In this document: positions 14,201 to 63,873 of the stretch, piece after piece
Layout of the letters: every line of letters starts with the position of its first letter
How positions within the stretch are numbered: position 1 is the first letter of the stretch
DNA from: Octopus bimaculoides
Lineage: Eukaryota
DNA: 64,000 nucleotides
Assembly (NCBI RefSeq): GCF_001194135.2
Contig: NC_068999.1
Coordinates: forward strand, 6,873,102-6,937,101
Direction of reading: 5' to 3'
Translations under genes and position numbers: made by a program
Notes under the pieces: model-generated
What the model was told of the DNA's origin: nothing
The model's input: only the letters and a program-made list of their open reading frames with translations
The model's database searches: none

Positions 14201-14993
14201 ACTCTTCCACCACAACTTTCTCTCACTCTTACTTCCTGTTTCTGTTGTGCCTGTAATTCAAAGGGTCAGCCTTGTCACACTGTGTCACGCTGAATATCTC
14301 CGNNNNNNNNNNAGGGGATGGTGGCGAACCCTGCTGTACTCTTCCACCACAACTTTCTCTCACTCTTACTTCCTGTTTCTGTTGTGCCTGTAATTCAAAG
14401 GGTCAGCCTTGTCACACTGTGTCACGCTGAATATCTCCGAGAACTACATTAAGGGTACACGTGTCTGTGGAGTGCTCAGCCACTTGCACGTTAATTTCAC
14501 GAGCAGGCTGTTCCGTTGATCGGATCAACTAGAACCCTCGACGTCGTAAGCGACGGAGTGCCAGCAACACAGTTGTGCATTAGTGCAAAACACTTGGTTA
14601 TAATATAGTTACTGCAACACTTGGTTATAATATAGTTGTGCATTAGTGTAAAACAGAAACAATGTATACAACTGGTGCAGTTATGCATTTTGTTAGAAGA
14701 GTTATTGTTCTCATACACTTGATGTCACTCCAATTGACGTGTTCTTAAGCTTTGTTTTGAGGATATATAAACACATAAATTACAATCTACACCAGTTTAT
14801 TGTTTCTCCTCCAATACTAGCTTTCATGTTGTTCTTTATATTTTAAAACTAACCCAGTCAGAGAAAGTAAATATCAAAGGGATCAGTTTCACACATAAGA
14901 TATGTGTCTGGATGGGTATGTATGTATGTATGTATGAGAGAGAGAGAGAGAGGGAGAGAGAGAGGGGGAGAGAGAGAGAAGGAGAGAGAGAGA

Positions 14994-15228: not shown

Positions 15229-16768
15229 AAATACACATGTGTAATATGTACATTTGTGCATATGCTAGTGCTAACATGCTATCTTCAAGATAGCAATGTG
15301 TTCTAGGAGATGTTTCACTTTAATTAAATTTATTCATCTAAGTTATCCCCTTTGTAGAGTGGATTTCACTTATCATCTTAATTCAATTCATACATTTGCA
15401 GTGATTCAACTGCCAATATTCTGAGCAGAATTGGAGTTGCAAATTGGATTTATTATACATTATACCGGAAATCTGGAAGATTCTCCCACTTTTGAAACGG
15501 TGCTCTTGTGAAAGTTTTTCTGTACTTTCAATATACAAGCATGAATTAGACATGTCTTAATACACAAAAGTGTTTTAAAAATCATTTCCTGTGGATAAGA
15601 TGGGTTCCTTTAATTGGTTCAACTGATTTCATATTCAGTGTATTCTGTTATGTGATATCGTGTGATGTATAAAAAGGAAAAACATCAAAGTTACAGTGTC
15701 GGATAGACACCTCTTCTCTTCCAATAAATCACAGGAATATTGAAGTTTGGAGCTGACAGAATAATTAATACATTTCACAAAATACTTAGGTGACATTTCT
15801 CACAGCTCTTTACATTCTGAGTTCAAATCCTGCTCAGGAAAACTTTGACCCTATTGAGGTCAATAAAATTAAGTACCAAAGGTGTGGTTGTGTGGTAAGA
15901 AGCTTGCTTCCCAACCACATGGTTCTGAGTTCAGTCCCACTGCATGGTACCATTGGTAAGTATCAACACAACTTTCTCTCACTCTTTCTTCCTGCTTTTG
16001 TCGTATCTGTATTTCAAAGTCGCCAATAAGCTTAGAAATATTACAAATACCTTCCAAAATAATTATACTGACCCCAAACGCACACGTCAACAGCACAAGT
16101 TCACTGTGGAAACACATGGTTTGGGGTTCAGTCCTGGCATGCGGCACCTTGGATAAATGTCTTCTACTATAGCTCCAAGTCAACCAACACATTATGAGTA
16201 ATCTGGTAGATGGAAACTGTGTTGAAGCCCCATTGTATATATGATCCATGGCCCTATATGTGCCAACAGCCTGGTAGTTAAGGATCTCCTGGCATATAGG
16301 ACCACATTTCAATGGGCCATGTCCATGCTCCAAAAAAAAAAAAGTAGGATGTGATTTGAGAGATATTCTGGTTCCCGTTTCTAGCACATAAAAGTGCTTT
16401 TACTGATTCACCAATGGGTTTTGTGCATTTTGTGGGCACTCGCAGATTACAAAGGATGTATGGATATGTATGCTGTGTGTGGGACAGAGAGATGGAAGGA
16501 GGAAGGCGGGGGCTGTGTCGGTGGGGGTACAGAATATGAAGCAGCTGTATTGAGCAAGGGAGAGGGGTGTTCTAAAACTATAAGCATACAAAAAAATAAC
16601 AGCAACAGCGATAATAATAATAATAATAATAATAACAAAATAAAATAAAATAAAAGGATGGACTTCCAAATCAGGAAAACGACAATTGTTTTCTGACCAT
16701 TGTTTCTACAATTAGAACGCCGGCAACACGAAGTATATTTACATAACTACTTTGCAAACAGACAAAGC

Positions 16769-16853
<85 letters not shown>

Positions 16854-19800
16854 GAGAGAGAGAGACACTTAAAGACAACAGAGAGTAAACTCCACAACAC
16901 AACAAAACCAAACAATTAACTCCTTTAACTCCAACTTGCAACTACAAGCACAAATTAACACACACACACACACACAGACACACAATCTCAGTCCAGACTT
17001 TTAATATGTTAGTCAATATCCTCTTTCTCTGTGAGCTTCTACATGGTCACTAGAACCACAAGAAATAGCAGCCAAACCACTCTACCATGTTCTCCCACTT
17101 ATGCACCTGAAAAGGACCGTGTTGGATAATGTAGTCCCAGATACACTGTGCATATGAATATGGGGGGGAGGAGAGCATTTCTGTATGGAGAAGCATGGCT
17201 GTGAAGTAATTAAGAAGCTAGCGTTGCATGCATGTGGTTTTGGGTTGACCAATAATGCCTTACGGGTGAATTTGGTAGACGGAAACTGTGTGGAAGCCCA
17301 TCACATATTACATACATACAAGTCACATGGTTATGTGACTGACCAGACTATTGCTACCAGACTTGTTACACATCGCTGGTCACAATGCGCTTTGCATCGT
17401 TTTAGTTTTTGAATGATGCCATTGCAATGGCGAGGCAAACAGGTCAACATTCCCCCTGAGCGACCTGGAGCAATGTGAAATGAAGTGTTTTGCTCAGTCT
17501 GGGAATTGAACCCACGATCTAGTGATTGTGAGTGCAACAGCCTAACCACCAGTGACGTCACAACTGACGTCTACAGCTGAGCGACCTGGAGCAACATGAA
17601 ATAAAGTGTTTTCATCAAGAACACAACACACAGCCCGGTCTGGGTATCGAACTCACTACCTCATGATTGCAAGCTTAATGCTCTAACCACTCTAAGTGTT
17701 AGTGGGTGGGTGCCTTTTACATGTGACCAGCACCAGCCACAACTACAATTTCACTTGACTTGATAAGTCTTCTCAAGCACAGCAAATCCTCAAAGGGCTG
17801 GCCAGTTTAAATGCTAAAATGTCAATACTACAACCCCCATCTTGATAATGACAATTAATTTACTAGAACCTCCATTTTTTTCCGTCCCCCCACCCAAATT
17901 AATTGAAACAAAAGAAATGTGATGGATTCCATTGGAACTCGCAAGCAACTGCAAGAAGAGTGCACACAATATTTCTCTGCCTATAATAACCATGTCACCA
18001 AATCAACTCACTTTTGATGGATAACTGAACAGTATGAGATATATATTGTCTTAAAACCCGAACCAACACAAACAGATTAATAGATTCAAAGGTAGTTATT
18101 TATTCATTTTGCATATTTTTACATGCATACCCACCACATTCTTCTTATTACCCACCTCTCTCTCTCTATCCCTCATTTTCTCCCCCACCCTCTGTACAGA
18201 TAATATAGATTTTTTTGTTTTTTTTTTGTTTATTGTCTGCATTTCCATCCAGAAAGAATAGCAAAACGTCTGACAGACTTGATGGTCTATTTACCGAGAT
18301 GAAACAACAACCAGTTAAATATAAACTCAGCAAACATTTTAATTCATAAAAATCAGACATGGAACTGCTTTGAAGGTCTTGNNNNNNNNNNNNNNNNNNN
18401 NNNNNNNNNNNNNNNNNNNNNNNNNNNNNNNNNNNNNNNNNNNNNNNNNNNNNNNNNNNNNNNNNNNNNNNNNNNNNNNNNNNNNNNNNNNNNNNNNNNN
18501 NNNNNNNNNNNNNNNNNNNNNNNNNNNNNNNNNNNNNNNNNNNNNNNNNNNNNNNNNNNNNNNNNNNNNNNNNNNNNNNNNNNNNNNNNNNNNNNNNNNN
18601 NNNNNNNNNNNNNNNNNNNNNNNNNNNNNNNNNNNNNNNNNNNNNNNNNNNNNNNNNNNNNNNNNNNNNNNNNNNNNNNNNNNNNNNNNNNNNNNNNNNN
18701 NNNNNNNNNNNNNNNNNNNNNNNNNNNNNNNNNNNNNNNNNNNNNNNNNNNNNNNNNNNNNNNNNNNNNNNNNNNNNNNNNNNNNNNNNNNNNNNNNNNN
18801 NNNNNNNNNNNNNNNNNNNNNNNNNNNNNNNNNNNNNNNNNNNNNNNNNNNNNNNNNNNNNNNNNNNNNNNNNNNNNNNNNNNNNNNNNNNNNNNNNNNN
18901 NNNNNNNNNNNNNNNNNNNNNNNNNNNNNNNNNNNNNNNNNNNNNNNNNNNNNNNNNNNNNNNNNNNNNNNNNNNNNNNNNNNNNNNNNNNNNNTTATCT
19001 TATTTTACAGATTGATAATTTTAGCCACCAGATCTGAAAAAAAAATCTCAGTTCATTTCAAGAAAGCAATATAAAAATAAAACTCTACTGATTATAATTT
19101 GGAATTCAGGAAAAAGTACAAATTATGAATGATCTTTTGCATGTATGCAGGCGTGGCTGTGTGGTTAAAGTTCTGTTTCCAAATCGCATAGAACATGGTT
19201 TGGGGTTCAGTACCACTGCATGGCAGCTTGGGAGAATCTCTTCTCCTTCTGTCATTGTCTCTGTCAGGCCAACTGAAGCCCTGTGAGTGGATTTGGTAGA
19301 TGGAAACTGATAGAAGCCCGTCCGCAGGCATGGCTGTATGGTAAGAAGCTTGCTTTCCAACCACATGGTTCTGGGTTCAGTCCTACTGTGCGGCACCTTG
19401 GGCAAGTGTCTTCTATTATAGCTTCAGGCCAACCAAAACCTTGTGAGTGGATTTGGTAGATGGAAATTGAAAGAAGTCCTCTGTGTGTGTATGTTACTGT
19501 CTCCTGCTTTTGACTTTGCATGATGGTTATAAATGAACATCACCAACATGAGATCAGTGTCCTTCATTTCCAATCTTCCCCAAAAGCATGTCAGGCCACA
19601 AGGACATGTCGAACTTACTCAGAAATAGGAGAAGATTGGCAACAAGAAGAGCATCTGGCCATAGAAAAATTCAATGCCCCAGCACACACTACCAATGTGA
19701 CCAAATGCAAACTTGGGAAGCTGGAAGCACTGCATCACCTTACATCAGAGCCTAGATGTTGTGCCAATAAATTACCACCTTTTCTGAACCATGGCTCATT

Positions 19801-46542: not shown

Positions 46543-47420
46543 CACACACACAGAGAAAAAAGCATTAGGACCATGTAACCCATGCTAGCATGAAAGCCTA
46601 TGAGTACAATGTGAAATAATGGTTTCAAATTTTGCCACAAGGGCAGCAATTTTGGGGGAGGGGACGAGTCGATTACATTGACCCACCCCCCTCCCCAGTG
46701 TTCAACTGGTACTTATTTTATCGACCCCGAAAGGATGAAAGGCAAAGTCGACCGCGGCGGAATTTGAACTCTGAACGTGAAGACGGGCGAAATGTCGCTC
46801 AGCAGTATTGCCCAGCGTGCTAACGATTCTGCCATCTCGCCGCCTTTACAATGTGAGATAATGATGTTGCTATATAAACATATACATGAACACACACACA
46901 TTATGTAAATATATATATTATATACCCGCACATACATATATGCATACACACATATATATATACACGTTGTACACACACATATATATATATATATATACAC
47001 GCACGAAAATACATACATATAGATATGTATACAATTGTGCGCGCGCTCTGCATTTTTACAGTGGAATCGTTTTTTTGAAATGAGAGGAAGTTGGGGTGGG
47101 TGGAAAAAAGTGAGATTTTGTTTGATCTTGTCTCCTAAACCTTGCATGAACAAGAAAGTGAAACGAAATTGGATGTTGTGGTGTTCATGCCTGCTTTTCA
47201 ACGGGAACCAGCAACGCATATGGAGAGAGAAACCGGCTTGGAAATATGCGAGGTTATTAAACGAAACGAACGTTTATCAACCAGGATTGCCGGGTCGGGG
47301 GTAGAAGACATGCAACTGCTCTTAGACAAAATAACAACAATAATAATGGTCTCTAATTTAGAAACCAGCAATTTTGAGGGAAGGGAGTCAGTCGATATCA
47401 CCGACCAGTATAAGACTGGT

Positions 47421-47456
<36 letters not shown>

Positions 47457-49163
47457 CTTCTTTCTACTAGAAGGCACAAGGCCTGAAAATTTCGGGGAAG
47501 AGGCCAGTCGATATTATCAATCAGTGTGCGTGACTGGTACTTAGTATGATCGACCCTGAAAGATTAAGTGCTAAGTTGAAATGTGAGATTCGAACTCAGA
47601 ACAAAAAGAAATATAGCAAAGCAATGTTTCCCTCGACGACGCTCTTAAACGATTTTCTACCAGTCAAGCCCACCTCAATATTACTAACAATCATTTTAAA
47701 CCAGGCACAATGTATATATCATGTATGAAGAAAATGCACTATCGAATCGGGTCCTTGTATCCGTTGCTGGCAATTTACTTCATCGATGTGAAATAAATGT
47801 CAAAAAGCCGAAAATAATTGTGATAATGATTCCTAAAAGAGACAGATACATTCTGAGAGCAGCGGTGGAAATGTCAGTCAAAGTAATTAGACAAACCGTA
47901 TTTAGTTGGTACTTTTACTTTAATCAATCCCAGAAGGACGAAAGATATACACAGCCAACCTCGGCGAGATTCGAATTTAATAATTAATAACGATGGTAAT
48001 GATTTGTTATATTTGCCACAAGGGCCCAATATACCGAGGACGATATCAAAGGATAAGATGCAAGACGCGAAAAGATGGGTTCATGTCGATCAAAGGGAGA
48101 CATTGCAACTATAAGATAACAAAATGATATAAAAATAGGATTAAGTAAACTACATAATTAGTAAATAGGATCCCCAAAAGGCGGGATCATCCACCTAGAG
48201 TAGGTAATTCGGGGTGAAAACCTCGCACAAGAAAGAATACCGGATTATTCTGCCATCTCCAAGGCATGGGAAGTGCCATCTTTCCTCCTACTTAATAATC
48301 CTTTCTAATATAAGCACAAGGCCTGGAATTCGTGGGGAGGAGGACAGTCGATGGCATCAACCCCAGTAATTAACTGGTTTTTAATTTATTAATCCCGAAA
48401 GGATGAAAGGCAAGGTCGACCTCAATGGAATTTGAACTGAGAACATAGCGGTAGATGAAATACCGCTAAGCATTTCGTCCGTTTGCGGTTTAAGGCACAA
48501 GGCCTGCAATTTTGAAGGGAGGCGATCTGTCTCCAGTATATCGGCTTCAGGTACCTCACTTACCTTCATTACATTATCCCAAAGAAGAAATGAAAAGCGA
48601 AGTATATCTCAGCAGGGTTTGATCTCAGAACATAAAAGGACCAGAAAAAAAAAGAGAAAGAGAGAGATAGAGCAATTGCCAGGCATTTTCCGACGCTTCA
48701 ACGATTCTGCCAACTAAATAATAATAATCATGATGAAAATGATGATGATGACTTTGTTTCTGAAATTTAAGGGAAAGGGATAAGTCTATTGCATAGACCT
48801 AGTGCATGAATGATACTTTATTCTATCGACCCTTGAAATGCAAAGCTGGCCCCGGCAAGATTCCGCCAGCGAAATCCTAATAATAGTAATAATAATAACA
48901 GTTTCTAATTTAGGCATAAAACTCGCGGTTTTAAAGGGAGGTGGTTTAGTCGATACCATCAATCCCCCACCACCACCACCACTAGTATTTGGTTGGTACA
49001 TTTTGTGGGCTCCCGAGGGACGATGAACGAAGCTGACCTCGGTGGGATTCGAACCCAGATCGTTCTGATAAAGCTTTAAATATGTAATGAAAAGGTGAAA
49101 AAATAAAGGAAATCTTGAAGTGAAAGCGGTTCACAATATATTCGGGAAATAGCTGAGGTATAA

Positions 49164-49202
<39 letters not shown>

Positions 49203-49721
49203 CAAATAAACAAGCATCATGATTGAGGGGGATAGAGGAAAAAAAAGGTATGAAATGTGTAACTGAGGACATATTAAGGAATGCAGATGAAAAATAAAAG
49301 GCTTTAGAAAGGGGAAATCGAACAAAGGAGCACCAATAATTTATTAGGGATCGAAATATAGAATTGTAAACATGCGAGTCTCAAAGACTCTTATGTGCCG
49401 GTATAATAATAATAATGAAGGGGATGAGGAAGAGGACTAAACAGAATGAAAGAGAAAGAGTTGCCAGAGAAATTAGAAAGACAAAGAGGTAGAAAGAGAG
49501 GGACGGGAGAAAGACTAGTAGTAGTGAGTAAGTAGGAGGAAGGGGAGGGCGCTCTTTTTCTGCCATATTGAAAAACTAGCAAATGTTGGTTTATCCTTCG
49601 ATCAAAGACATTGAGATTGTGTATTTCTGAGAAATGCTTACCTTCCGTAAATGCTATCAGTTATTTTGCTGCGCTTCACCGGGCGCCGCAGTTTGCCACT
49701 CTCGGCATTCCGTCTCTTCAT
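5020..49721 (-). CDS. MACO1: Macoilin gene, 5' part: join(49721..49642, 5161..5020), 74 codons; continues off the left end of the window
   Basis: Hand-spliced translation [27 protein letters not shown]|[47 protein letters not shown] matches the recalled human macoilin N-terminus ([59 protein letters not shown]). Splice sites are GT-AG and the phase-2 junction rebuilds AGT (Ser). Confidence 0.95.
5500..5793 (+). mobile_element. (GAT)n-tailed retroposon 3' fragment (family C), inverted relative to 4437-4656
   Basis: ...ccaacccatgccagcatggaaagcggacgttaaacgatgatgacgatg. Confidence 0.85.
14050..14568 (+). mobile_element. tRNA-derived SINE (family B, CAA tail)
   Basis: A-box TCGCCCAGTGG, B-box GGTTTCGATTCC. 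The 3' part (gtctgtggagtgctcagccacttgcacg...gacggagtgcca) recurs at 1143-1351, 2153-2408, 19960-20194, 61672-61950 and 63015-63310. Confidence 0.85.
21178..21430. repeat. Compound (GA)n/(GATA)n microsatellite, one of dozens of (TA)n, (TG)n, (GA)n, (TAA)n and (CAT)n tracts in the window
   Basis: Direct reading; other examples at 14935-15030, 25871-25918, 29170-29410 and 33351-33396. Confidence 0.95.
22053..22439. mobile_element. piggyBac-like MITE (TTAA-CCCTTTAGCATT ... AATGCTAATGGG-TTAA) carrying a nested retroposon insertion
   Basis: TTAA at both ends and CCC/GGG termini; related copies near 12570-12900, 26870-27045, 41938-42159, 42590-42800, 55300-55400 and 57290-57460. Confidence 0.7.
30783..30930. 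repeat. Long inverted repeat: 57-bp arms, 34-nt spacer
   Basis: Arms 30783-30839 and 30874-30930 with 4 mismatches; the inner 32 bp are perfect (TAGAACTCAGAGTTTCAAATACCGGAGCTAAG). Confidence 0.95.
35359..36602 (+). mobile_element. CR1/L2-group LINE ORF2 fragment (APE endonuclease C-terminal half, linker and start of RT), frameshifted
   Basis: CTIYRPPN...[14 protein letters not shown] (APE GDFN motif), [55 protein letters not shown]. It stops just before the expected YRPISL of the RT domain. Confidence 0.88.
37845..38100. repeat. AT-only minisatellite (units around tatatacataatataatatatatatat) ending in (AG)n
   Basis: Direct reading. Confidence 0.8.
39908..40296 (+). mobile_element. Full-length tRNA-derived octopus SINE (family A)
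   Basis: A-box-like TAGCTGTGTGG, B-box-like GGTACAGTCCC, internal (TA)/(TG) tract. Many partial copies, e.g. 130-470, 758-915, 1365-1515, 4660-4850, 13611-13750, 19147-19490, 27430-27765, 54965-55185, 60645-60830. Confidence 0.85.
41938..42159. mobile_element. piggyBac-like MITE, same family, opposite orientation
   Basis: TTAA|CCCTTTAACATT ... GAAGGG|TTAA. Confidence 0.7.
42240..44200 (-). mobile_element. Fragmented, degenerate RTE-clade LINE ORF remnant, interrupted by other repeats
   Basis: Minus-strand peptides [11 protein letters not shown] and [32 protein letters not shown] (RT N-terminus, 43730-43950), and [20 protein letters not shown]...ILKKTKMM (YADD region, 42390-42535); multiple stops and frameshifts. 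Confidence 0.7.
44395..44530. repeat. ~24-bp minisatellite (gttatacatacatgtgcacataca)n
   Basis: About 5-6 degenerate tandem units. Confidence 0.75.
44571..45571 (+). mobile_element. Degenerate mariner-type DNA transposon
   Basis: HTH-like [24 protein letters not shown]; frameshifted NPDLAPSDFH (YSPDLAPSDFHLF motif) near 45270; KVAVKKWV...SFKEG tail; degenerate TIRs gttgtcctgaaaa / ttttgggacaaactg. Confidence 0.7.
45590..46464 (+). mobile_element. Internally deleted Tc1/mariner element of the maT (DD37D) type
   Basis: TA flanks at 45588-89 and 46465-66. TIRs CAGGGTGCGATGGGTAAATTGT / reverse complement CAGGGTGTGGTGAATAAATTGT. Peptides [30 protein letters not shown]...WPPNSPDCKPLN and [20 protein letters not shown]. 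The spacing is 37 residues after removing one extra C. Confidence 0.85.
46621..46846 (-). mobile_element. tRNA-derived SINE (family D)
   Basis: Minus-strand head GGCGGCGAGATGGCAGAATCG...GAGTTCAAATTCC. Copies near 8680-8800, 9125-9335, 9410-9625, 11035-11250, 22450-22650, 25010-25150 and 47350-49060. Confidence 0.8.
49642..49721 (-). CDS. MACO1: Macoilin coding exon 1 (80 nt)
   Basis: ATG at 49721-49719; [26 protein letters not shown] plus 2 nt; donor AG|GTAAGC at 49641. Confidence 0.95.
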
Positions 49722-50324
49722 ATTCCAATACGAACCGATGTTTTCTCTCCTTTCTTTCAAGCGAGCTAGCTTAGAAATGACAAAATAACAACACTGTGTA
49801 TGCGTATGTGTACGTGTGTGTGTGTGTGTGTGTGTGTGCCTGCCTATGTATGTATATGTGTGTGTTCTAGCGTGTGTGTGTGCGTACTTATTGTAATTGC
49901 TTGTTTTTGTTGTTGTTATTTGTCTCTTCAGTTTTTTTTTTTTAATTTGTTAAAATCGTAAATCCTCACATTAAACTCTCAACTAATTTTCCACAAATAA
50001 AAATCAAGAATTACGTTAAAAGATAAAACAAAAAACACAAGAAACAAGACAAAAATATATTCCAACGAGACTTGTACGAGATCCTGCCGCGCGTTAGTTT
50101 GACGTAAAAACAACCATTCTCAACAGCGTCTATTACAATACGGAAAGTTCCGTAAACCCAGCATTCACTACGTCAATTTACGTACATTTCCGTATCCCGT
50201 TTCGTTAAAGATCGTTACTTTCCGTAGTTGCTTCAAGAATATTCCGTATAAATTGCATTTCACCCATCTTTTCTCTTTCTCTCTCCGAAATTCTTCAGCT
50301 CTTCGCAATTATTTCCCTCACACC
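49722..50324. promoter_or_regulatory. Bidirectional promoter and 5' UTR region shared by macoilin and CCT8
   Basis: Divergent ATGs 603 nt apart; CpG-retaining sequence; CRE-like TGACGTAA (50100) and TACGTCAA (50169); five TTCCGTA/TACGGAA motifs; 20-nt pyrimidine tract 50267-50286. TSS positions are not determined. Confidence 0.75.
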
Positions 50325-50384: not shown

Positions 50385-51075
50385 GTAAGTTAACGAGTTA
50401 TTTTCGAGGATTTCACTTTAAAATTTAACACAAAAACTTGAAAGACCATGTGAGCAGTCATTAATTAAATTCCAATTAATGGTGCTTGTCTTGTTTATTT
50501 CCTCAGTTTCTTCATTGTTATAATTAATTCTGAACACAATTTTACTCTATGATGTTGCCTCAATTACTTAAAAACATATTTTTACAATAAATTACCACAT
50601 AAGACCTTAATTAATTAAATAAAAACCGCTTTCTTCCTCTCCCAATGGCCGGGGCGTGATGATAAATACCGCTTTTATAATTAATATCTAAACCATGCGG
50701 CCTCTTATTCCCTGTTACTATTAGAATTTCTACCTATTTTTATTTACTACATTTATAGATATGTGTTTTAAATTTTTATAATAATGTCATCTGTTGATTG
50801 CATGTTCTTGATTTTGCATGCTGTGTCATCTAAGCGGGTCATAAAGTTACCCATTGATGGAAATTATGAAGGCACCACATGGCATATTACATCTCATATC
50901 CATGCTTAACGACTGAACCCCATTTATTAAAAAGACTTTATTTTAAATTTTGTATTCTAACAACGGTACAGCATCTCAGTATATTGTTTAATGTCATCAT
51001 CATTTACTCTGGTTCTCCCTTCCCCGCCATTTTGCCCTCTTCTTTTTATTTTATTTCGTAACGTTCGCTGACATG

Positions 51076-51114
<39 letters not shown>

Positions 51115-54100
51115 CACATATAAAATCAAGGGTTCTTTTCGATCAGTCATGAGCAAACAGCGGCTCGTCTGATTAATGAGGCTCGCTTCTTGAAAAAGGT
51201 TCCCCCATGCCGGTCCTAGATAGTCTCTTGTCCTGTCCTGCCAGAAATACCAGCCACATCACATCCCACCTTGTCATACACTAAAAAAAAAAAAAAAAAA
51301 ACATGACACCTTGGATGTTTTAGTTCTAGATAAGGTACTATTCAAGAAGAGTGGTCCCGGTGCGCGCTCTCGCGAATAGTACCCTAGATAATTAGGACGT
51401 GATGGTTACGGATGGAACTCTTTTTATAGTGGGTCTGTTCGATCAGGGTTACCCTGATAAACTGGCTAAACAAAAGAAAAAGACCGGCGATATTCTTGGT
51501 TATTTTTCACATGAATTTTACCGGGATCAATAAAATGAAGTACCCTTAATATACTGCCGATTATTAAATTTTCTGAAGTCACCGCACCCTTATCTTATAA
51601 AATAAGTTATGCTATTTCCGAGGGAAAAGCCATCGCCTCGGTTCTGGCATTTTCTTGCCTGTAATGAAAGTAATTTCGAAAAATGCAGCAATTTTTATGC
51701 CAAATATCTCGAAAATGGCTTATAAGATCACCAGTGTTGAGTTATACTAACAGTGGTTACTAATAATTGCTCAAGTTCTTGTATTTCGTCTACTATTTGC
51801 ACGTGGTTAGTTTTTGACGATACCTAACCGGTTCAGCTCGTCCGTCTTTGGGAGATATGGTTGCCTGTACTATTTCCCCCACTTGTATGAATGAATAACC
51901 GCCTGATTTATTCAAAGTTACAGGACTTATAATATTGACCATAGGGTTTTTGAGTTGCTGCGGAGATTGTTTTTGTGTTGTTGTTGAAAGTAAATTAAAG
52001 TAGTTGGCGTAAGGAAGGGTTTCTAGACCTGCTTATGCTATTTAATAAATGGGCAAGAAAACGGCGTTAATTTGTCTTTATAAAAGCAATGAATGGTTAT
52101 ATTTAAGCATTTAATTACCTGCTCGCAATTGTAGCAGTTTTCCCTCAAATGATACGTCACCATCTTGAAAAAAAGGTTTAATCGGATAACGTTGTGGAAG
52201 AGACAATCTCCAGACACTTAGAAGGGGATGGTTTTTTAAATTTTATTTATTCATTTCTTCCGTTCTAAGATTGATGTTGACATGTCTCCAAAAGACCTTG
52301 TCAATTAGAAACCATCTGAGCCTTTCCAAGTCATAGCACCTACATTGTTGTAGTCATCACCATGATTGTCCAAGTAAACTACCTGGCATTGAAATCGTCT
52401 ATGATAGAACTGATAGAAAGCTCTTCAACTTCACAGACTAAGGAAACGGCCACATTAGTGCAAATTTGTAGTGAAGCCGACAGTCATCCTTTAGGTATTT
52501 GATGAAATGCATTTCTATTTTGGACTGAACGTCAATCCTAAGCTATCATGTATTGACCTTCAAGTACTTTCATTCACAATAGATGGAGAGGCTTTCAGAA
52601 GTGTTGACCACTTTCCATATTTCTCTTCTAATGCTGACATTGATGGCAAGATTCAGTACAAACTTGACTGTGTTTGAGCAGCCTTTGGATGCTTACTGGT
52701 AAGAGTCTTCAAGAACTGAGGTCAAGGCTGATTTGGGCTAAAACAGCAAGAAACATGTGCAAAAGATTCAAATTAAATAACCAAACAACAAAATTTTGCA
52801 AAGTTGTGGTGCAATCTCAATATCAAAATGAACATCTAAATTTAATAAGAAAGTCCTTTCCAGTTTATGCAAGTAAGGAATGAATGAAAGAAAGCAAAAT
52901 GGTTATCACATATTCTATTTTTCAGTTTTACATGCTAGTTCTCTATAGCAGCACTCCGAAGTCTTTGTCCTCTGTTGATTTTTACAAATAAGCTTTTATA
53001 CAAGTTAAATAAAGACCATTTGTCCTGTTCAGCTCCCTTACAGGGTTACTTGACATTTGTAGATTGTTTAAAAACTGCTACTGTTACTTTTTTTTAAAAA
53101 GAAAAAGACACTGACAACATTTGATGAACAAGCATGATTCAGTGAGACAGTTGTTCAACTTTTCTATTGTGTCTGGGGAGAGTCCTCTTTTAATGCCTTA
53201 TCTAACACACTGATTCGATTTCTACTTGTTTACTCGATTTTTTTTCAAAAATTTTTGTTGTGTCTTGAAACCTCTTCAATAGTCGTCCACGTGTCTACCT
53301 ATCTATAAACTAGGCTGAGATATACCATATTTAGAGCGATGAAGTACTTTTTAGGTGTGATTAGTTTTGTAGGAGCAAGCCAGTTGCTGGGGGAAAAAAA
53401 TCAATGAATTTTAGCTGTTTGATCTATAATACCATAGGGTTTAATTTCTCTGTACATTTTTAGATGTTCAAAATAAATATAACGTTTTTGTTTTTTCAGA
53501 GTTATTAGTTTTTCTTTCCTGTTCATTAATAATCTGGAAATTAATTTGCATTTAATTTTATTTTAACAGCATTATATGGGCCTTGAAGAAGCTATCTACA
53601 GAAATATTGATGCTTGTAAAGAGATAGCGAAAACAACAAGATCTGCTTATGGTCCTCATGGTAAGGTGTCATACAATTTTCCTATGCTTTGAAAAGAACT
53701 GGCCAACTTGAATGGTAGACCTAATTGTCTTTCTGGTCAGCATAACCATCTAGCTTTTTGGTACACAGTATTGGGGGCATTTGTGTTGATTATTTACTCT
53801 CTGGATAACTTTGTCATCCATTCTTGAAGGCTTTGGGGTTCATAGGTATTGCCTTTCTTTCTGTGATAAAATTGTCCTTACACAGTATTATTTTGTAGTG
53901 TTTGGCGTTAGGAAGGGCATCCAGCTGTAGAAACTCTGCCAAATCAGATTGGAGCCTGGTGTAGCCATATGGTTTCACCAGTCCTCAGTCAAATCGTCCA
54001 ACCCATGCTAGCATGGAAAGCGGACGTCAAACGATGATGATGATGTTTCTGTAATCTTTGATTTGCCTGTTGCAGAGTTCCTAAAATGACAGGTTTGTGC

Positions 54101-60100: not shown

Positions 60101-62257
60101 TGACCAATAAGACTTAACTATGCCTGTTTTAATCTTGATTACAAAGTAATTGTGCTGATCAAAATAGCCTGATTTAGAGGTGTCTTTATATAATTCTTGA
60201 TGCTTTCATCAACAAAAGAAAATAACAAACTCTCCACAAGGCAAGCACACAGCAGGAGAGCTCTTCAGAGGAAGAACTCCCATCCAACAAGTGTTTCTGC
60301 CCTTATACCTGATGCCCTGCAGGAGTCAGGCCCACTTGGGTCATGACTCTTGTGTGTCCTGCTGCTGCTTTCCAAAATCCTGTCTCCAGCAGGATTTGAA
60401 CCTGGGTGGTTGTTTTTGTGAACTTGTGCTCCCAGGTCTGTGTTTCAGTCGACTCTGACTGACAAAGCAACCAGTTCTCTTCTTCCTTATATTCCTGTGA
60501 ATAACTAATGGAATCCATAATTAGGTCTATTAGTCATTTCTAGACTAACTTAAAAATTCTAAAGCATTTAGTTTCCGATACCAGTGTTGTCAGTGGTCAA
60601 AGCAGATGCTGTAGAAGTAAAGCTGGTGCCTGTTTTATTAGGTGCGGGCATGGCTATGTGGTTAAGAAATTCACTATATGGTTTCAGGTTTGGTCTTGCT
60701 GCGAGGCACCTTGGGCAAGGCTGACCAATGCTTTGTGAGTGAATTTGGTTAATGGAAATAAGTACTGGGGTCAAATTGACTAAACCATTCCATCAGCTGC
60801 TCTGCATGGCTGTAGTCCACTGATTGAATCAAAAGACAAGTCTGGACTTCAGATTTTAATTTTAGTTATGTCCACTTCAAAGAACATCTTTTCGTACTTA
60901 ATCCACCTCAAAATTATGGCATTTTATTAATAAAATAAATTGACTGTTTGGGAATATGTTAGTGGCTCATTTGAGAAACTTGCAATGTTAGAATATATAT
61001 TTTATAGTACACCTGACATATTTAATTATGCTATTTTCTATTCTAGACTGTTCCAACCACTGAAGAGATGGGGTATTGTGACCATGTTTATGTAGATGAA
61101 ATTGGAGAAACTGCTGTTGTGATATTTAAACAAGGTGAGTAGGACACCTGCATTTTATTTCTTAATTATTGATAATGATTGATGCACTTATTAGCCTGAT
61201 TGTTTATTTTTATTCCATTTTTTTTCTCTCTCTGATTTTAGAGAAGGAAGACACTGCAGTCTCTACAATTGTAGTCAGGGGTTCGTCTGACAATATTGTA
61301 GATGATATTGAAAGATGTATTGATGATGGTGTCAACACATTCAAAGCTATGACAAAGGTAAGGGCTGAAACATTAGTTGTTATATCGGTCCTGTAGTGCC
61401 TTCTATTAATTACTCCCCCCGATTCTGTTGGAAGCTAGAGATTTTCATAAGATGCTGTTAGCCAAGTACTATTATTTAAGGAAAGAAAAACAGGAATGTA
61501 TGTATATAAACTATTGCATGAATTTGGGTGAAATTTGTTGATAGCATTATAATGACTAATATACATTGAAGATGTAGTTTTAACCTGTTATTTCACTTTC
61601 ATTTACCAAGTAGTTTGAATGCAGATAAGTCAGTTTTTAAGTTTTTTTCCGGGGATGGGGTATACATTTCTGAAGGTGCATGGCTTAGTGGTTAGGGTGT
61701 TTGGCTCAAGGTCATGAGTTCAATTCCTGGCAGCACATTGTGTCCTTGAAGAAGACACTCAGTTTCACAAAAGTGATTAGTACCTGTAAATCGAATGGGT
61801 CGCAATCTGTGTCACACTGAATCTCTTTGAAAATACCTGAAAGGTATATGTGTCTGGAGTACCCAGCCACTTGCATGTTGATTTCACAAGCAGGCTGTTC
61901 TCTTCATCGGGTCAACTGCAACACTTGTTCTCAGAACTGATGGAGAGCCCCGCTCTTCTGTTAAGTTTCGTATACATCTGGAATCAGAAATATAAACTGT
62001 AGTGATACAGAAAAATACTTTCTGTAAACCAAATATGATTAATGGTCTGTGAGGACAAAGATTGAAAACTATGGCACTATTTTATACACATCTGTGATTG
62101 TGGACATTTAGTTTGTGTACCATTGTACATTGTTGTAAAATAGTGTTTTTATTAATATTATGTGATATTGCATATTTTATTGCAGGATAGTAGATTGGTT
62201 GCTGGTGGAGGTGCAGTGGAAATTGAACTGGCTAAAAGAATTACTACTTTTGGTGAG
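50325..62257 (+). CDS. CCT8: T-complex protein 1 subunit theta (CCT8), exons 1-13 (1284 nt, 428 codons); 3' exons lie beyond the window
   Basis: Thirteen GT-AG exons splice in frame to MALHVPKAPGFSSMLKEGAR-HYMGLEEAIYRNIDACKEIAKTTRSAYGPHG-QNKMIINHIEKLFVTNDAATIL...GDGTN...DSRLVAGGGAVEIELAKRITTFGE. The MALHVPKAPG N-terminus and the GDGT and AGGGA motifs are characteristic of CCT theta. Confidence 0.98.
52390..52715 (+). mobile_element. RTE-clade LINE RT C-terminal remnant in CCT8 intron 1
   Basis: Peptides RTDRKLFN, FGLNVNPK and TIDGEAFRSVDHFPYFSSNADIDGKIQYKL...AAFG..LVRVFK resemble the RTE post-YADD region; degenerate. Confidence 0.6.
53570..53660 (+). CDS. CCT8: CCT8 exon 2 (91 nt)
   Basis: ttttaacag|HYMGLEEAIYRNIDACKEIAKTTRSAYGPH|GTAAGG. 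Confidence 0.97.
53903..54045 (+). mobile_element. Family C retroposon short 3' fragment in CCT8 intron 2
   Basis: Near-identical to 27176-27322 and to the reverse complement of 22254-22413; GAT tail. Confidence 0.85.
54816..54895 (+). CDS. CCT8: CCT8 exon 3 (80 nt)
   Basis: tttgcag|(G)QNKMIINHIEKLFVTNDAATILNELS|GTAAGT. Confidence 0.97.
55602..55841 (-). mobile_element. hAT-Charlie-type MITE (240 bp)
   Basis: Ends CAGTGTTTC / reverse complement CAGTGCTACTCAAAGTGGTGGTCCGCAG; 8-bp TSD ctctagac / gtctagac fits the Charlie target NTCTAGAN. Confidence 0.75.
55940..56071 (+). CDS. CCT8: CCT8 exon 4 (132 nt)
   Basis: VQHPAAKMLVMASQQQEQECGDGTNAVLILAGSFLEHAEELLRM; contains the GDGT ATP-binding motif; AG/GT flanks. 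Confidence 0.97.
56738..56807 (+). CDS. CCT8: CCT8 exon 5 (70 nt)
   Basis: tttgtag|GLSVPEVIEGYEIAYAKAVEYLP|GTATGG. Confidence 0.95.
57058..57186 (+). CDS. CCT8: CCT8 exon 6 (129 nt)
   Basis: (D)LVVGQVKDLRNREEVRKIVRSAVMSKQYGSEDFLADLITDAC; donor GTGAGT. Confidence 0.96.
58131..58192 (+). CDS. CCT8: CCT8 exon 7 (62 nt)
   Basis: (T)GILSMKNTFNVDNVRVCKIL; AG/GTAAG flanks. Confidence 0.96.
58434..58571 (+). CDS. CCT8: CCT8 exon 8 (138 nt)
   Basis: GCSMMNSSVLQGMVFKRAVEGDITKAEKCKIVIYSCPLDSLQTETK. Confidence 0.97.
59512..59583 (+). CDS. CCT8: CCT8 exon 9 (72 nt)
   Basis: GTVLIKTAEELLNFSKGEEDQMER; donor GTTAGT. Confidence 0.96.
59692..59865 (+). CDS. CCT8: CCT8 exon 10 (174 nt)
   Basis: HIQSIAESGVNVIVTGGKVGELSLHYCNKYNLLVVRLLSKFDLRRLARSVSATVLPKV. 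Confidence 0.96.
60290..60460 (-). mobile_element. Older tRNA-derived SINE fragment in CCT8 intron 10
   Basis: Minus-strand B-box GGTTCAAATCC followed by a GC-rich core (gagtcatgacccaagtgggcctgactcctgcagggcatcag). Confidence 0.5.
61047..61134 (+). CDS. CCT8: CCT8 exon 11 (88 nt)
   Basis: TVPTTEEMGYCDHVYVDEIGETAVVIFKQ; donor GTGAGT. Confidence 0.96.
61242..61357 (+). CDS. CCT8: CCT8 exon 12 (116 nt)
   Basis: (E)KEDTAVSTIVVRGSSDNIVDDIERCIDDGVNTFKAMTK. Confidence 0.97.
62186..62257 (+). CDS. CCT8: CCT8 exon 13 (72 nt)
   Basis: DSRLVAGGGAVEIELAKRITTFGE; donor GTAAGT. Confidence 0.97.
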
Positions 62258-62900: not shown

Positions 62901-62982
62901 ACTGTTGCCATGATGATTCCCATGTTGGATTCCCCTTCTGATTTGATATGGAGACATTCAACTTTCTGATAACTGCAACAGT
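62901..62982 (+). ncRNA. Intronic box C/D snoRNA, copy 1 (predicted 28S rRNA 2'-O-methylation guide)
   Basis: Perfect 8-bp terminal stem ACTGTTGC (62901-08) / GCAACAGT (62975-82). Box C ATGATGA 62910-16, guide GTTGGATTCCCCT 62924-36, D' CTGA 62938-41, C'-like ATGGAGA 62948-54, box D CTGA 62966-69. Sense strand of CCT8 intron 13. Confidence 0.82.
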
Positions 62983-63784
62983 TTGTGTGTATGTGTATTT
63001 CTCTTTTTATATAAGTGGAGACAAATGGTTTAATGGTTAGGGTGTTTGGCTCATGGTCGTAGGTTCAATTCCCAGCAGCATGTTGTGTCCTTGAGCAAGA
63101 CACTTTATTTCACGTTGCTCTAGTCTACTCAGCTGGCAAAAGTGAGTTGTGTTCTAGATTCAAAGGACCGGCCTTGTTGCATTCTGCTTCATGCTGAATC
63201 CGAAAAATATGTTAAAGGTATGCGTGTCTGTGGAGTGCTCAACCACCTGCATGTTGCTTTCATAAACAGTCTGTTCTGTTGATTTGATCGACTGCAACCC
63301 TTACCTTAACCAACAGAGTACCAGTCATATAGGTATAATGATTGTGGTGACTGACTTCATTGGATATCTGATGAAAGCTAATAGGTTGAAACATCGGAGT
63401 CACTGTTGCCAATCTTCCAGTGAAACGATATAAATACAAAAAATGGAACAAAAACGCCATGGAGGACGATAAAACATTCGGACAGATAGATGACCTGAAG
63501 GTGGACAAGAGAAACAACAATTAGGACAGGCAAAAAACAATGGGTGGCCTTCTTTCCTCAGTCAAGTTACCAGAAGTCCTTACTGTTTCGGGCAGTTACA
63601 CTTGAGACAATTCGATCTGGTTGCCCCCAATAAAGTTAAGACCATTAGATTTTTTTGTCAGAAAGTTAGCGAATGTGTATGGTATGTTCTCATGGGTATT
63701 TATGTATAGATGCTGGCAGGGCTGGGGTTATTTAAAAAGTTGGCTTTAATTTCTCTCTTTTCTCTTTCTCCTCGTTGAGGTCAT

Positions 63785-63873
63785 CTGTTGTTAACGTTAA
63801 ATATGATGATGATTATATGGATTCCCCTTCTGACTTCTATGGAGATGTTCCATTTTCTGATTACTGGCAACAG
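63785..63873 (+). ncRNA. Intronic box C/D snoRNA, copy 2 (paralogue of copy 1)
   Basis: Terminal stem CTGTTG (63785-90) / CAACAG (63868-73). Box C ATGATGA 63803-09, guide TGGATTCCCCT 63818-28, D' CTGA 63830-33, ATGGAGA 63839-45, box D CTGA 63857-60. Confidence 0.8.

What the first reader, a model, noticed from the sequence alone, without database searches (positions are those of the whole stretch)
62901..63873. Duplicated box C/D snoRNA pair in CCT8 intron 13, predicted to guide 28S rRNA 2'-O-methylation (human Gm3606/3627-equivalent)
Seen in sequence: two units of about 80-90 nt, roughly 0.9 kb apart, each with a terminal stem, box C (ATGATGA), D' (CTGA), C'-like ATGGAGA and box D (CTGA). 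TGGATTCCCCTTCTGA is identical in both, while the D-proximal segments have diverged (acattcaacttt vs atgttccatttt), the pattern expected when selection acts on one guide. Established knowledge, recalled: eukaryotic 28S rRNA contains ...CCAGGGGAAUCCGACUGUUUAAUU.... The copy-1 guide pairs with it over 13 nt (one G:U) and the copy-2 guide over 10 nt. The D+5 rule puts the methyl on the third G of AGGGG. Inference: counting from the recalled pseudouridines 3616/3618, this is human Gm3606 (3627 in newer numbering). I do not recall vertebrate CCT8 as a snoRNA host or a settled guide for this site, so this may be an unannotated snoRNA family and host pairing.
Basis: partly seen in the sequence, partly recalled or inferred. 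Interest (0 to 1): 0.8.

Follow-up and report, generated by a model that had tools for sequence, protein, structure and literature searches.

The report
Octopus SNORD101-like snoRNA array in CCT8
The two units are real box C/D small nucleolar RNA genes in an intron of the octopus CCT8 chaperonin gene, predicted to direct one conserved ribose methylation of 28S rRNA; they belong to a guide type already known from plants (snoR60) and mammals (SNORD101), so this is a sound annotation rather than a new kind of RNA.

Summary
The window is Octopus bimaculoides. Two sense-strand box C/D units lie in CCT8 intron 13, each with C, D', C' and D boxes, a closing stem and the shared 15-mer GGATTCCCCTTCTGA.

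The target prediction holds. On three complete eukaryotic rDNA units the D' guide has one clear best match, 28S CAGGGGAAUCCGAC, which puts the methyl on the third G.

The family is not new. Rfam gives sub-threshold matches to snoR60 and SNORD101 (clan CL00074), whose consensus carries the same guide. AtsnoR60 guides Arabidopsis 25S Gm2125, listed as equivalent to human Gm3627. Mouse Snord101 knock-down abolished 28S-Gm3283.

The "pair" is the start of an array:
- O. bimaculoides has at least 5 copies in intron 13.
- Argonauta has 10, Sepia 7, O. sinensis 10-11 and O. vulgaris 7, all inside CCT8.
- CCT8 of four non-cephalopod molluscs has none.

Octopus-Argonauta similarity in the intron is confined to the snoRNA itself.

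Two extras are unexplained. All O. vulgaris and O. sinensis copies carry a weakened guide. The C'-to-D spacer is complementary to the distal D' guide, as it also is in plant snoR60.

No expression or methylation data could be obtained. Verdict: new member of a known kind, with a cephalopod-specific host; interest is moderate.

The parts
62183..62257 (+). CCT8 coding exon 13 (residues about 405-428); the intron that follows hosts the snoRNAs
   Evidence: tblastn of Octopus sinensis CCT8 (P0001) against the window; the exon start is approximate
62901..62982 (+). snoRNA copy 1 with its closing stem (type A, Argonauta/Sepia-like); the mature RNA is probably about 62905-62973
   Evidence: (SNORD101 27.0 bits, E 0.0097); similarity to Argonauta is confined to 62901/62909-62971
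62901..62908 (+). copy 1, 5' arm of the closing stem (ACTGTTGC)
62910..62916 (+). copy 1 box C (ATGATGA)
   Evidence: invariant in alignments A2 and A3
62924..62937 (+). copy 1 D' antisense element (GTTGGATTCCCCTT); pairs with 28S AGGGGAAUCCGAC
   Evidence: -24.4 kcal/mol; 13 bp with one G:U
62938..62941 (+). copy 1 box D' (CTGA)
62948..62954 (+). copy 1 box C' (ATGGAGA, degenerate)
62955..62965 (+). copy 1 C'-to-D spacer (CATTCAACTTT); no convincing rRNA target; complementary to GTTGGAT of the D' guide
62966..62969 (+). copy 1 box D (CTGA)
62975..62982 (+). copy 1, 3' arm of the closing stem (GCAACAGT)
63005..63305 (+). interspersed (SINE-like) repeat inserted between the two copies; not part of the snoRNA
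   Evidence: 8 further partial copies on both strands of the window; ARAGORN finds no tRNA
63785..63873 (+). snoRNA copy 2 with its external stem (type B, first member of a young tandem family); the mature RNA is probably about 63799-63864
   Evidence: (snoR60 31.1 bits, E 3.8e-4)
63803..63809 (+). copy 2 box C (ATGATGA; an overlapping alternative lies at 63806-63812)
63818..63829 (+). copy 2 D' antisense element (TGGATTCCCCTT)
   Evidence: -19.9 kcal/mol; 11 bp with one G:U
63830..63833 (+). copy 2 box D' (CTGA)
63839..63845 (+). copy 2 box C' (ATGGAGA)
63846..63856 (+). copy 2 C'-to-D spacer (TGTTCCATTTT)
63857..63860 (+). copy 2 box D (CTGA)

Best explanation
The two units are intron-encoded box C/D snoRNA genes of Octopus bimaculoides. 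They are the first two of at least five copies in CCT8 intron 13.

Proposed mechanism:
1. Each unit is transcribed as part of the CCT8 pre-mRNA.
2. A stem in or beside the unit brings box C and box D together. The core proteins (Snu13, Nop56, Nop58, fibrillarin) assemble on them, and exonucleases trim the intron to an RNA of about 68-70 nt.
3. The element just upstream of box D' (GUUGGAUUCCCCUU in copy 1) pairs with 28S rRNA 5'-AGGGGAAUCCGAC-3'.
4. Fibrillarin methylates the 2'-OH of the nucleotide opposite the fifth guide position, the third G. This site corresponds to human 28S Gm3606/Gm3627, Arabidopsis 25S Gm2125 and, by inference from the guide sequence, mouse Gm3283.

The RNAs are cephalopod counterparts of plant snoR60 and mammalian SNORD101, carried by a different, cephalopod-specific host gene and amplified by tandem duplication.

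Shown here: the anatomy, host, copy number, conservation, complementarity and family resemblance. Inferred: expression, processing, RNP assembly and the methylation itself.
For: Anatomy and non-chance occurrence.

Family:
- The best Rfam matches are snoR60 (31.1 bits, E 3.8e-4) and SNORD101 (27.0 bits, E 0.0097). Both are in clan CL00074, and both consensus sequences contain GGAU(U/A)CCCCUUC.
- Sepia copies reach 33.4-37.5 bits against snoR60, whose cut-off is 40.

Target:
- On three Rfam-confirmed complete rDNA units, the D' guide's top hit in every unit is 28S CAGGGGAAUCCGAC, with a G at the fifth position. The run is 12 of the 13 positions scanned, with 1 G:U.
- The runners-up need 4-5 G:U pairs.
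- Duplex energies are -20 to -24 kcal/mol.

Literature:
- AtsnoR60 is assigned to 25S Gm2125, listed as equivalent to human Gm3627 (PMC8583080).
- Knock-down of mouse Snord101 abolished 28S-Gm3283 (PMC11863803).

Selection:
- Copies sit in the sense strand of CCT8 introns in five cephalopods. Boxes C, D' and D and the guide core are invariant, while the closing stems differ by lineage: CUGUUGC/GCAACAG in octopods and CAGUAGA/UCUACUG in Sepia.
- Octopus-Argonauta similarity in the intron is limited to window 62901/62909-62971, essentially the snoRNA.
Against: - No small-RNA, RNP or RiboMeth-seq evidence could be obtained, so expression and methylation are inferred.
- No cephalopod 28S sequence was available. 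The target motif was verified only in other eukaryotes' rDNA.
- Rfam scores are below the gathering cut-offs.
- Copy 2 belongs to a young tandem family whose whole 250-650-bp units are 85-95% identical. Its conservation among paralogues therefore says little.
- Copy 2 has a shorter guide, and its box C is 9 nt from the external stem rather than 1 nt.
- In O. vulgaris and O. sinensis every copy of that family has a weakened guide (-14.8 kcal/mol). This shows the family can drift.
- Several snoRNAs in one intron, far from the 3' splice site, is not the arrangement known to be processed efficiently in vertebrates.
Confidence: 0.8

Rival explanations
1. Only the older copy (copy 1, type A) is a working guide. 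Copy 2 and its tandem relatives are recently amplified, decaying or redundant snoRNA-derived repeats, carried along by unequal crossing-over in a microsatellite-rich intron.
For: - Whole repeat units, not just the snoRNA, are 85-95% identical.
- Each unit is followed by a (TG)n tract.
- Copy 2 has a shorter guide and a remote external stem, and its fold is no better than shuffles (z = -0.34).
- The sister lineage, O. vulgaris and O. sinensis, carries only this type, with a 1-nt insertion and a U-to-C change in the guide.
Against: - All boxes are intact in every type B copy of three Octopus species.
- In O. bimaculoides the guide GGAUUCCCCUU is identical in all five copies.
- O. vulgaris and O. 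sinensis have lost the type A segment, so type B would be their only CCT8-borne copy.
- The C'-to-D spacer and distal guide still change together in type B.
Confidence: 0.12
2. The RNAs are real snoRNAs, but their main role is not methylation of this G. They might instead use the C'-to-D spacer as a second guide for another RNA, or act as a folding chaperone that holds this 28S segment.
For: - The spacer core AUUCAAC is conserved between Octopus copy 1, Argonauta and Sepia.
- Gm3627 is reported absent in Xenopus laevis, so the methylation is dispensable in some animals.
Against: - The spacer has no match better than 9-10 bp, some with G:U pairs, in three complete rDNA units, and the hits are not the same site in each unit.
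- Its conservation is explained by complementarity to the D' guide.
- The D' guide geometry is canonical, and both known relatives direct methylation at this site.
Confidence: 0.05
3. The box-like motifs arise by chance in AT-rich intron sequence, or belong to an ordinary dispersed repeat.
For: The window is 35% G+C and repeat-rich.
Against: - Expected chance matches are 0.03 against two loci observed.
- Only two copies occur in 64 kb, both in the sense strand of one intron.
- The units are conserved in five cephalopods.
- Rfam E-values are 4e-4 and 1e-2.
Confidence: 0.01

Closest known systems
Plant snoR60 (Rfam RF00339; AtsnoR60)
   Same: - Box C/D RNA of about 70 nt.
- The D' antisense element GGAUUCCCCUU is identical to the Rfam consensus.
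- Same target: Arabidopsis 25S Gm2125, listed as human Gm3627.
- Same complementarity between the distal D' guide and the C'-to-D spacer, in the same register (consensus ACUcGGAUU / AAuuCgAGU).
   Different: - Scores are below the Rfam cut-off: 31.1 bits for copy 2 and up to 37.5 in Sepia, against 40.
- The host is an animal protein-coding intron, in a multi-copy array.
- D' is a perfect CUGA here, against CAGg in the plant consensus.
- The distal guide and spacer carry compensating differences.
Mammalian SNORD101 / U101 (Rfam RF00186)
   Same: - Same clan (CL00074).
- The guide UGUCGGAUACCCCUU pairs with the same 28S segment.
- Knock-down in mouse cells removed 28S-Gm3283.
   Different: - The mammalian guide has an internal A-A mismatch; the cephalopod guide is a perfect match there.
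- SNORD101 has a D'-to-C' hairpin (CACUC/GAGUG) and an unrelated D spacer.
- By my recollection its host is RPS12, one copy per intron. Here the host is CCT8, with 5-11 copies.
- The score of 27 is well below the cut-off of 47.
Zebrafish SNORD201
   Same: Reported as related in sequence to SNORD101.
   Different: The reported similarity excludes the antisense element, so it guides another site. The cephalopod RNAs keep the element.
Multi-copy intronic snoRNA arrays (plant and Drosophila intronic clusters, mammalian SNORD115/116 repeats; recalled, not tested)
   Same: Tandemly amplified, near-identical C/D snoRNA genes inside one transcription unit, evolving in concert.
   Different: Here several copies share single introns of a housekeeping chaperonin gene, and no repeated exons were detected between them.

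Membership tests
Box C/D snoRNA (class) | Box C (RUGAUGA) near the 5' end and box D (CUGA) near the 3' end | tested here: met
   Both copies have ATGATGA and CTGA. Box D is invariant in 13 distinct cephalopod sequences, and box C is invariant except for its last base, G in one Sepia copy.
Box C/D snoRNA (class) | Terminal or external stem that brings boxes C and D together | tested here: met
   9-bp stems in both copies and 6-8 bp in Argonauta, Sepia and O. vulgaris. The stem sequences differ between octopods and Sepia.
Box C/D snoRNA (class) | Internal D' and C' boxes with spacers of suitable length | tested here: met
   D' is CTGA and C' is ATGGAGA (degenerate). The C-D' spacer is 20-21 nt, D'-C' is 5-6 nt and C'-D is 11 nt.
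Box C/D snoRNA (class) | Antisense element of at least 10 nt ending next to D or D', complementary to rRNA, with the target opposite position 5 | tested here: met
   11-13 bp with 28S CAGGGGAAUCCGAC. This is the unique top hit in three rDNA units, with a G at position 5. Cephalopod 28S itself was not available.
Box C/D snoRNA (class) | Stable small RNA bound by fibrillarin, Nop56, Nop58 and Snu13 | not testable with these tools
   No expression or RNP data were accessible.
Rfam clan CL00074 (snoR60 RF00339 / SNORD101 RF00186) | Covariance-model score at or above the curated gathering cut-off | tested here: not met
   Copy 2 scores 31.1 against 40 for snoR60. Copy 1 scores 27.0 against 47 for SNORD101. 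The best Sepia copy scores 37.5 against 40. These are nonetheless the top-ranked families.
Rfam clan CL00074 (snoR60 RF00339 / SNORD101 RF00186) | D'-side antisense element GGAU(U/A)CCCCUU directed at the LSU site equivalent to human Gm3627 | tested here: met
   Identical to the snoR60 consensus and one base from the SNORD101 consensus. Site equivalence comes from PMC8583080.
Rfam clan CL00074 (snoR60 RF00339 / SNORD101 RF00186) | Loss of the snoRNA abolishes methylation of that G | not testable with these tools
   Shown only for mouse Snord101.
Orthologue of mammalian SNORD101 by position | Same host gene (RPS12 intron, recalled from memory) | tested here: not met
   The host here is CCT8. 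Octopus RPS12 could not be examined.

The most novel reading that the evidence does not exclude
Two linked readings are not excluded.

(1) The complementarity between the distal D' guide and the C'-to-D spacer is kept in the same register from plant snoR60 to cephalopods, through compensating changes. It may be a functional internal helix that pre-folds or masks the guide and must open for rRNA binding.

(2) In the O. vulgaris/O. sinensis lineage the whole CCT8 array has been replaced by copies with a weakened guide (7 bp, a bulge, then 3 bp). Closely related octopus species may therefore differ in the level, or presence, of an rRNA methylation shared by plants and mammals. That would be a natural case of ribosome modification turnover driven by concerted evolution of a tandem snoRNA array.
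Probability: 0.2. Interest if true: 0.55.

Novelty: new member of a known kind. Interest (0 to 1): 0.35.

Why it matters
It adds an apparently unannotated guide RNA to a cephalopod genome, since standard Rfam thresholds miss it.

It extends the snoR60/SNORD101 guide for the Gm3627-equivalent site to lophotrochozoans, in a form that matches 28S perfectly at the position where the mammalian guide has a mismatch. That supports an ancient origin for this modification, whose human guide was listed inconsistently until 2025.

It also shows a lineage-specific host (CCT8) and rapid turnover of copy number and guide sequence within a genus. This gives a simple comparative test, O. bimaculoides against O. 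vulgaris, of how much guide pairing a methylation site needs.

Tried and rejected
- Rfam at gathering thresholds on the whole window: nothing. Permissive mode over 49-64 kb found no other snoRNA in CCT8 and only microsatellite-driven 'mir-297'-type matches.
- My recollection that SNORD143/144 guide this site was wrong; a published table lists them for Um2415.
- Earlier literature assignments of human Gm3606/3627 to SNORD12 and SNORD31 conflict with each other and with the later knock-down of Snord101.
- The C'-to-D spacers as second guides: at best 9-10 bp with rRNA. One weak candidate is 18S GUAGUUGGAU, whose position-5 U is, by my recollection, a pseudouridine in yeast. I rejected these as convincing targets.
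- The altered O. vulgaris guide against 18S GGAAUUCC: only 8 bp and -12.4 kcal/mol, weaker than its residual match to the 28S site.
- Tandem Repeats Finder on the arrays found nothing because the periods exceed 500 nt; self-BLAST was used instead.
- MAFFT could not put the closing stems of different lineages in register, so I made no formal covariation count for them.
- ARAGORN found no tRNA in the repeat between the copies.
- No supplementary tables were held for the Snord101 paper. The mouse G3283 to human G3606 equivalence therefore rests on the guide sequence, not on a printed table.
- I considered fetching octopus rDNA or octopus RPS12 through protein look-ups, but did not try: the hit lists would be swamped by other taxa.

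Full report
**What is there**

The sequence at 62901-63873 contains two units on the + strand with complete box C/D anatomy.
- Copy 1 runs from a 5' stem arm (62901-62908) through box C (62910-62916), a 21-nt spacer ending in GTTGGATTCCCCTT, D' CTGA (62938-62941), a degenerate C' ATGGAGA (62948-62954), an 11-nt spacer and box D (62966-62969), to the 3' stem arm (62975-62982).
- Copy 2 has the same order between 63785 and 63873.
- A pattern of box C, D' and D with these spacings occurs only at these two places in the 64-kb window, against 0.03 matches expected from shuffles.
- The 15-mer GGATTCCCCTTCTGA occurs exactly twice.
- Both units fold with a 9-bp stem that closes boxes C and D.

**Host and organism**

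- Stop-to-stop reading frames showed chaperonin-like exons.
- A protein search identified them as T-complex protein 1 subunit theta, best hit Octopus sinensis.
- The window is identical to the O. bimaculoides CCT8 locus: window 62901 equals L002 15577.

**Family**

- At Rfam's curated thresholds the window has no match.
- In permissive mode the best matches are copy 2 to plant snoR60 (31.1 bits, cut-off 40, E 3.8e-4) and copy 1 to SNORD101 (27.0 bits, cut-off 47, E 0.0097).
- Both families belong to clan CL00074, and their consensus sequences contain GGAUUCCCCUUC and GGAUACCCCUUC, the same antisense element.
- Sepia copies score 33.4-37.5 bits against snoR60.
- So this is a divergent relative of a described guide type, not a new family. 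It falls short of the formal Rfam cut-offs.

**Target**

No cephalopod rRNA was available.
- I fetched 61 metagenomic contigs that carry the recalled 28S motif. Three of them hold complete 18S, 5.8S and 28S genes by Rfam.
- Scanned against those units, the D' guides of copy 1, copy 2, Argonauta and Sepia have the same top hit in every unit: 28S CAGGGGAAUCCGAC, with the third G opposite guide position 5.
- The next-best sites need 4-5 G:U pairs.
- Duplex energies are -19.7 to -24.4 kcal/mol.
- Copy 1 forms 13 bp including one G:U. Copy 2 forms 11 bp including one G:U.

**Literature**

- A RiboMeth-seq study of Arabidopsis lists 25S Gm2125 as guided by AtsnoR60 and as equivalent to human Gm3627 (PMC8583080).
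- In mouse cells, knock-down of the former orphan Snord101 abolished 28S-Gm3283 (PMC11863803).
- The antisense oligonucleotide used there, and the Rfam consensus, show a guide that pairs with the same 28S segment with one internal mismatch. I infer from this that mouse G3283 is the same site; no table printing the equivalence was available.
- Gm3627 is reported absent from Xenopus laevis.
- Zebrafish SNORD201 resembles SNORD101 outside the guide.

**Comparative evidence**

I retrieved CCT8 loci for O. sinensis, O. bimaculoides, Argonauta hians, Sepia pharaonis and O. vulgaris.
- O. bimaculoides has five copies in intron 13: the two in the window and three beyond its end, around a 2.2-kb assembly gap.
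- Argonauta has ten copies, five in intron 12 and five in intron 13.
- Sepia has seven, lying between exons 4 and 6 and between exons 10 and 12.
- O. sinensis has ten or eleven copies and O. vulgaris seven, all in intron 13.
- All copies are in the sense strand.
- Boxes C, D' and D and the guide core are invariant across 13 distinct sequences.
- The closing stems differ by lineage, CUGUUGC/GCAACAG in octopods and CAGUAGA/UCUACUG in Sepia.
- Between Octopus and Argonauta, detectable similarity in the intron is confined to window 62901/62909-62971, which is the snoRNA. This is the signature of purifying selection on the RNA.
- CCT8 of Haliotis rubra, Pinctada imbricata, Lottia gigantea and Liolophura sinensis carries no such element. 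The CCT8 residence therefore looks cephalopod-specific.

**Two types and their turnover**

- Copy 1 is the Argonauta/Sepia-like type A, with spacer AUUCAACUU.
- Copy 2 is the first member of type B, a young tandem family whose whole units of about 250-380 bp are 88-92% identical in O. bimaculoides. The corresponding units in O. sinensis are about 530-650 bp and 85-95% identical.
- In O. sinensis and O. vulgaris the type A segment is missing.
- Every type B copy there reads UGUGGAAUUCCCCCU before D'. That is a one-base insertion plus a U-to-C change.
- The changes cut the duplex with the 28S site to 7 bp, a bulge and 3 bp (-14.8 kcal/mol).
- Two independent assemblies agree, so this is not an assembly artefact. 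Whether these copies still work, or whether another locus compensates, cannot be told here.

**The second spacer**

- It has no convincing rRNA target, but it does not drift freely.
- In each sequence type it is complementary to the distal half of the D' guide:
  - GUUGGAU/AUUCAAC in copy 1 and Argonauta
  - AGUUGGAUU/AAUUCAACU in most Sepia copies
  - AAUUGGAU/AUUCAAUU in another Sepia copy
  - GUGGAA/UUCCAC in O. vulgaris
  - a shifted AUGGA/UCCAU in copy 2
- A formal count gives 77% of cells paired, against 46-61% when the partners are slid.
- Two pairs show compensating changes in six cells. The covariation score is 0.175 against 0.108 in shuffles, reached by 4 of 500 shuffles.
- The same complementarity, in the same register and with C:G where cephalopods have U:A, is visible in the Rfam consensus of plant snoR60.
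- The sequences are related and few, so this is suggestive only.
- A plausible reading is an internal helix that zips the two spacers in the free RNA and must open for rRNA binding.

**Mechanism**

The best-supported account is the canonical one.
1. The units are processed from the CCT8 intron and assemble with the core C/D proteins.
2. They pair through the D' element with 28S.
3. Fibrillarin methylates the third G of AGGGGAAUCC.

Anatomy, host, conservation and complementarity are shown here. Expression, processing and methylation are inferred.

Several snoRNAs in one intron, hundreds of bases from the 3' splice site, suggests processing helped by the flanking stems rather than by the splice-site distance used in vertebrates. 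This last point rests on general knowledge, not on a test here.

**Verdict**

- The claim of a new family is not supported.
- The host pairing appears new and cephalopod-specific.
- This is a new member of a known kind. The modest extra interest comes from the array dynamics, the weakened guide in O. vulgaris and O. sinensis, and the guide-spacer complementarity.

Noticed in passing
L001 19460-25848 and L005 18918-23400 (O. sinensis and O. vulgaris CCT8 intron 13): All 7-11 array copies carry an altered D' guide, UGUGGAAUUCCCCCU (one inserted A and one U-to-C). It pairs much less well with the 28S site. The type A copy present in O. bimaculoides is missing.
   Followed up: partly
window 62924-62931 with 62956-62962, and the same positions in all cephalopod copies: The C'-to-D spacer is complementary to the distal D' guide in every sequence type, with compensating changes. 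The same pairing appears in the Rfam snoR60 consensus.
   Followed up: partly
window 63005-63305: An interspersed, SINE-like repeat sits between the two snoRNA copies. Eight other partial copies occur on both strands of the window, for example 61680-61926, 14393-14538 and 2186-2334.
   Followed up: partly
window about 47325-49721 (- strand) and the upstream end of L001-L005, L007, L069 and L070: A macoilin-family gene (PF09726) lies head-to-head immediately upstream of CCT8 in octopods, Sepia, Pinctada, Lottia and Liolophura. This synteny is conserved across molluscs, with roughly 600 bp between the two genes in the window.
   Followed up: no
L002 16547-16676 and 18835-18964, flanking the N run 16677-18834: The 130 bases on either side of the assembly gap in O. 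bimaculoides intron 13 are 100% identical. The gap probably marks a collapsed or mis-joined part of the snoRNA array, and the true copy number is uncertain.
   Followed up: no
L003 16029-16088 (Argonauta): One array copy has GUCGGAUUCCCC instead of GUUGGAUUCCCC. This turns the single G:U pair with 28S into G:C, as in mammalian SNORD101.
   Followed up: no
window 49796-49860 and 51061-51134; L004 20336-20416: Sub-threshold Rfam matches to mir-297, mir-466 and mir-1277 fall on (TG)n/(TA)n microsatellites and are low-complexity artefacts.
   Followed up: yes
window 5372-41315: There are nine runs of N (3,607 bases in all) in the upstream part of the window. None lies in or near the finding.
   Followed up: no
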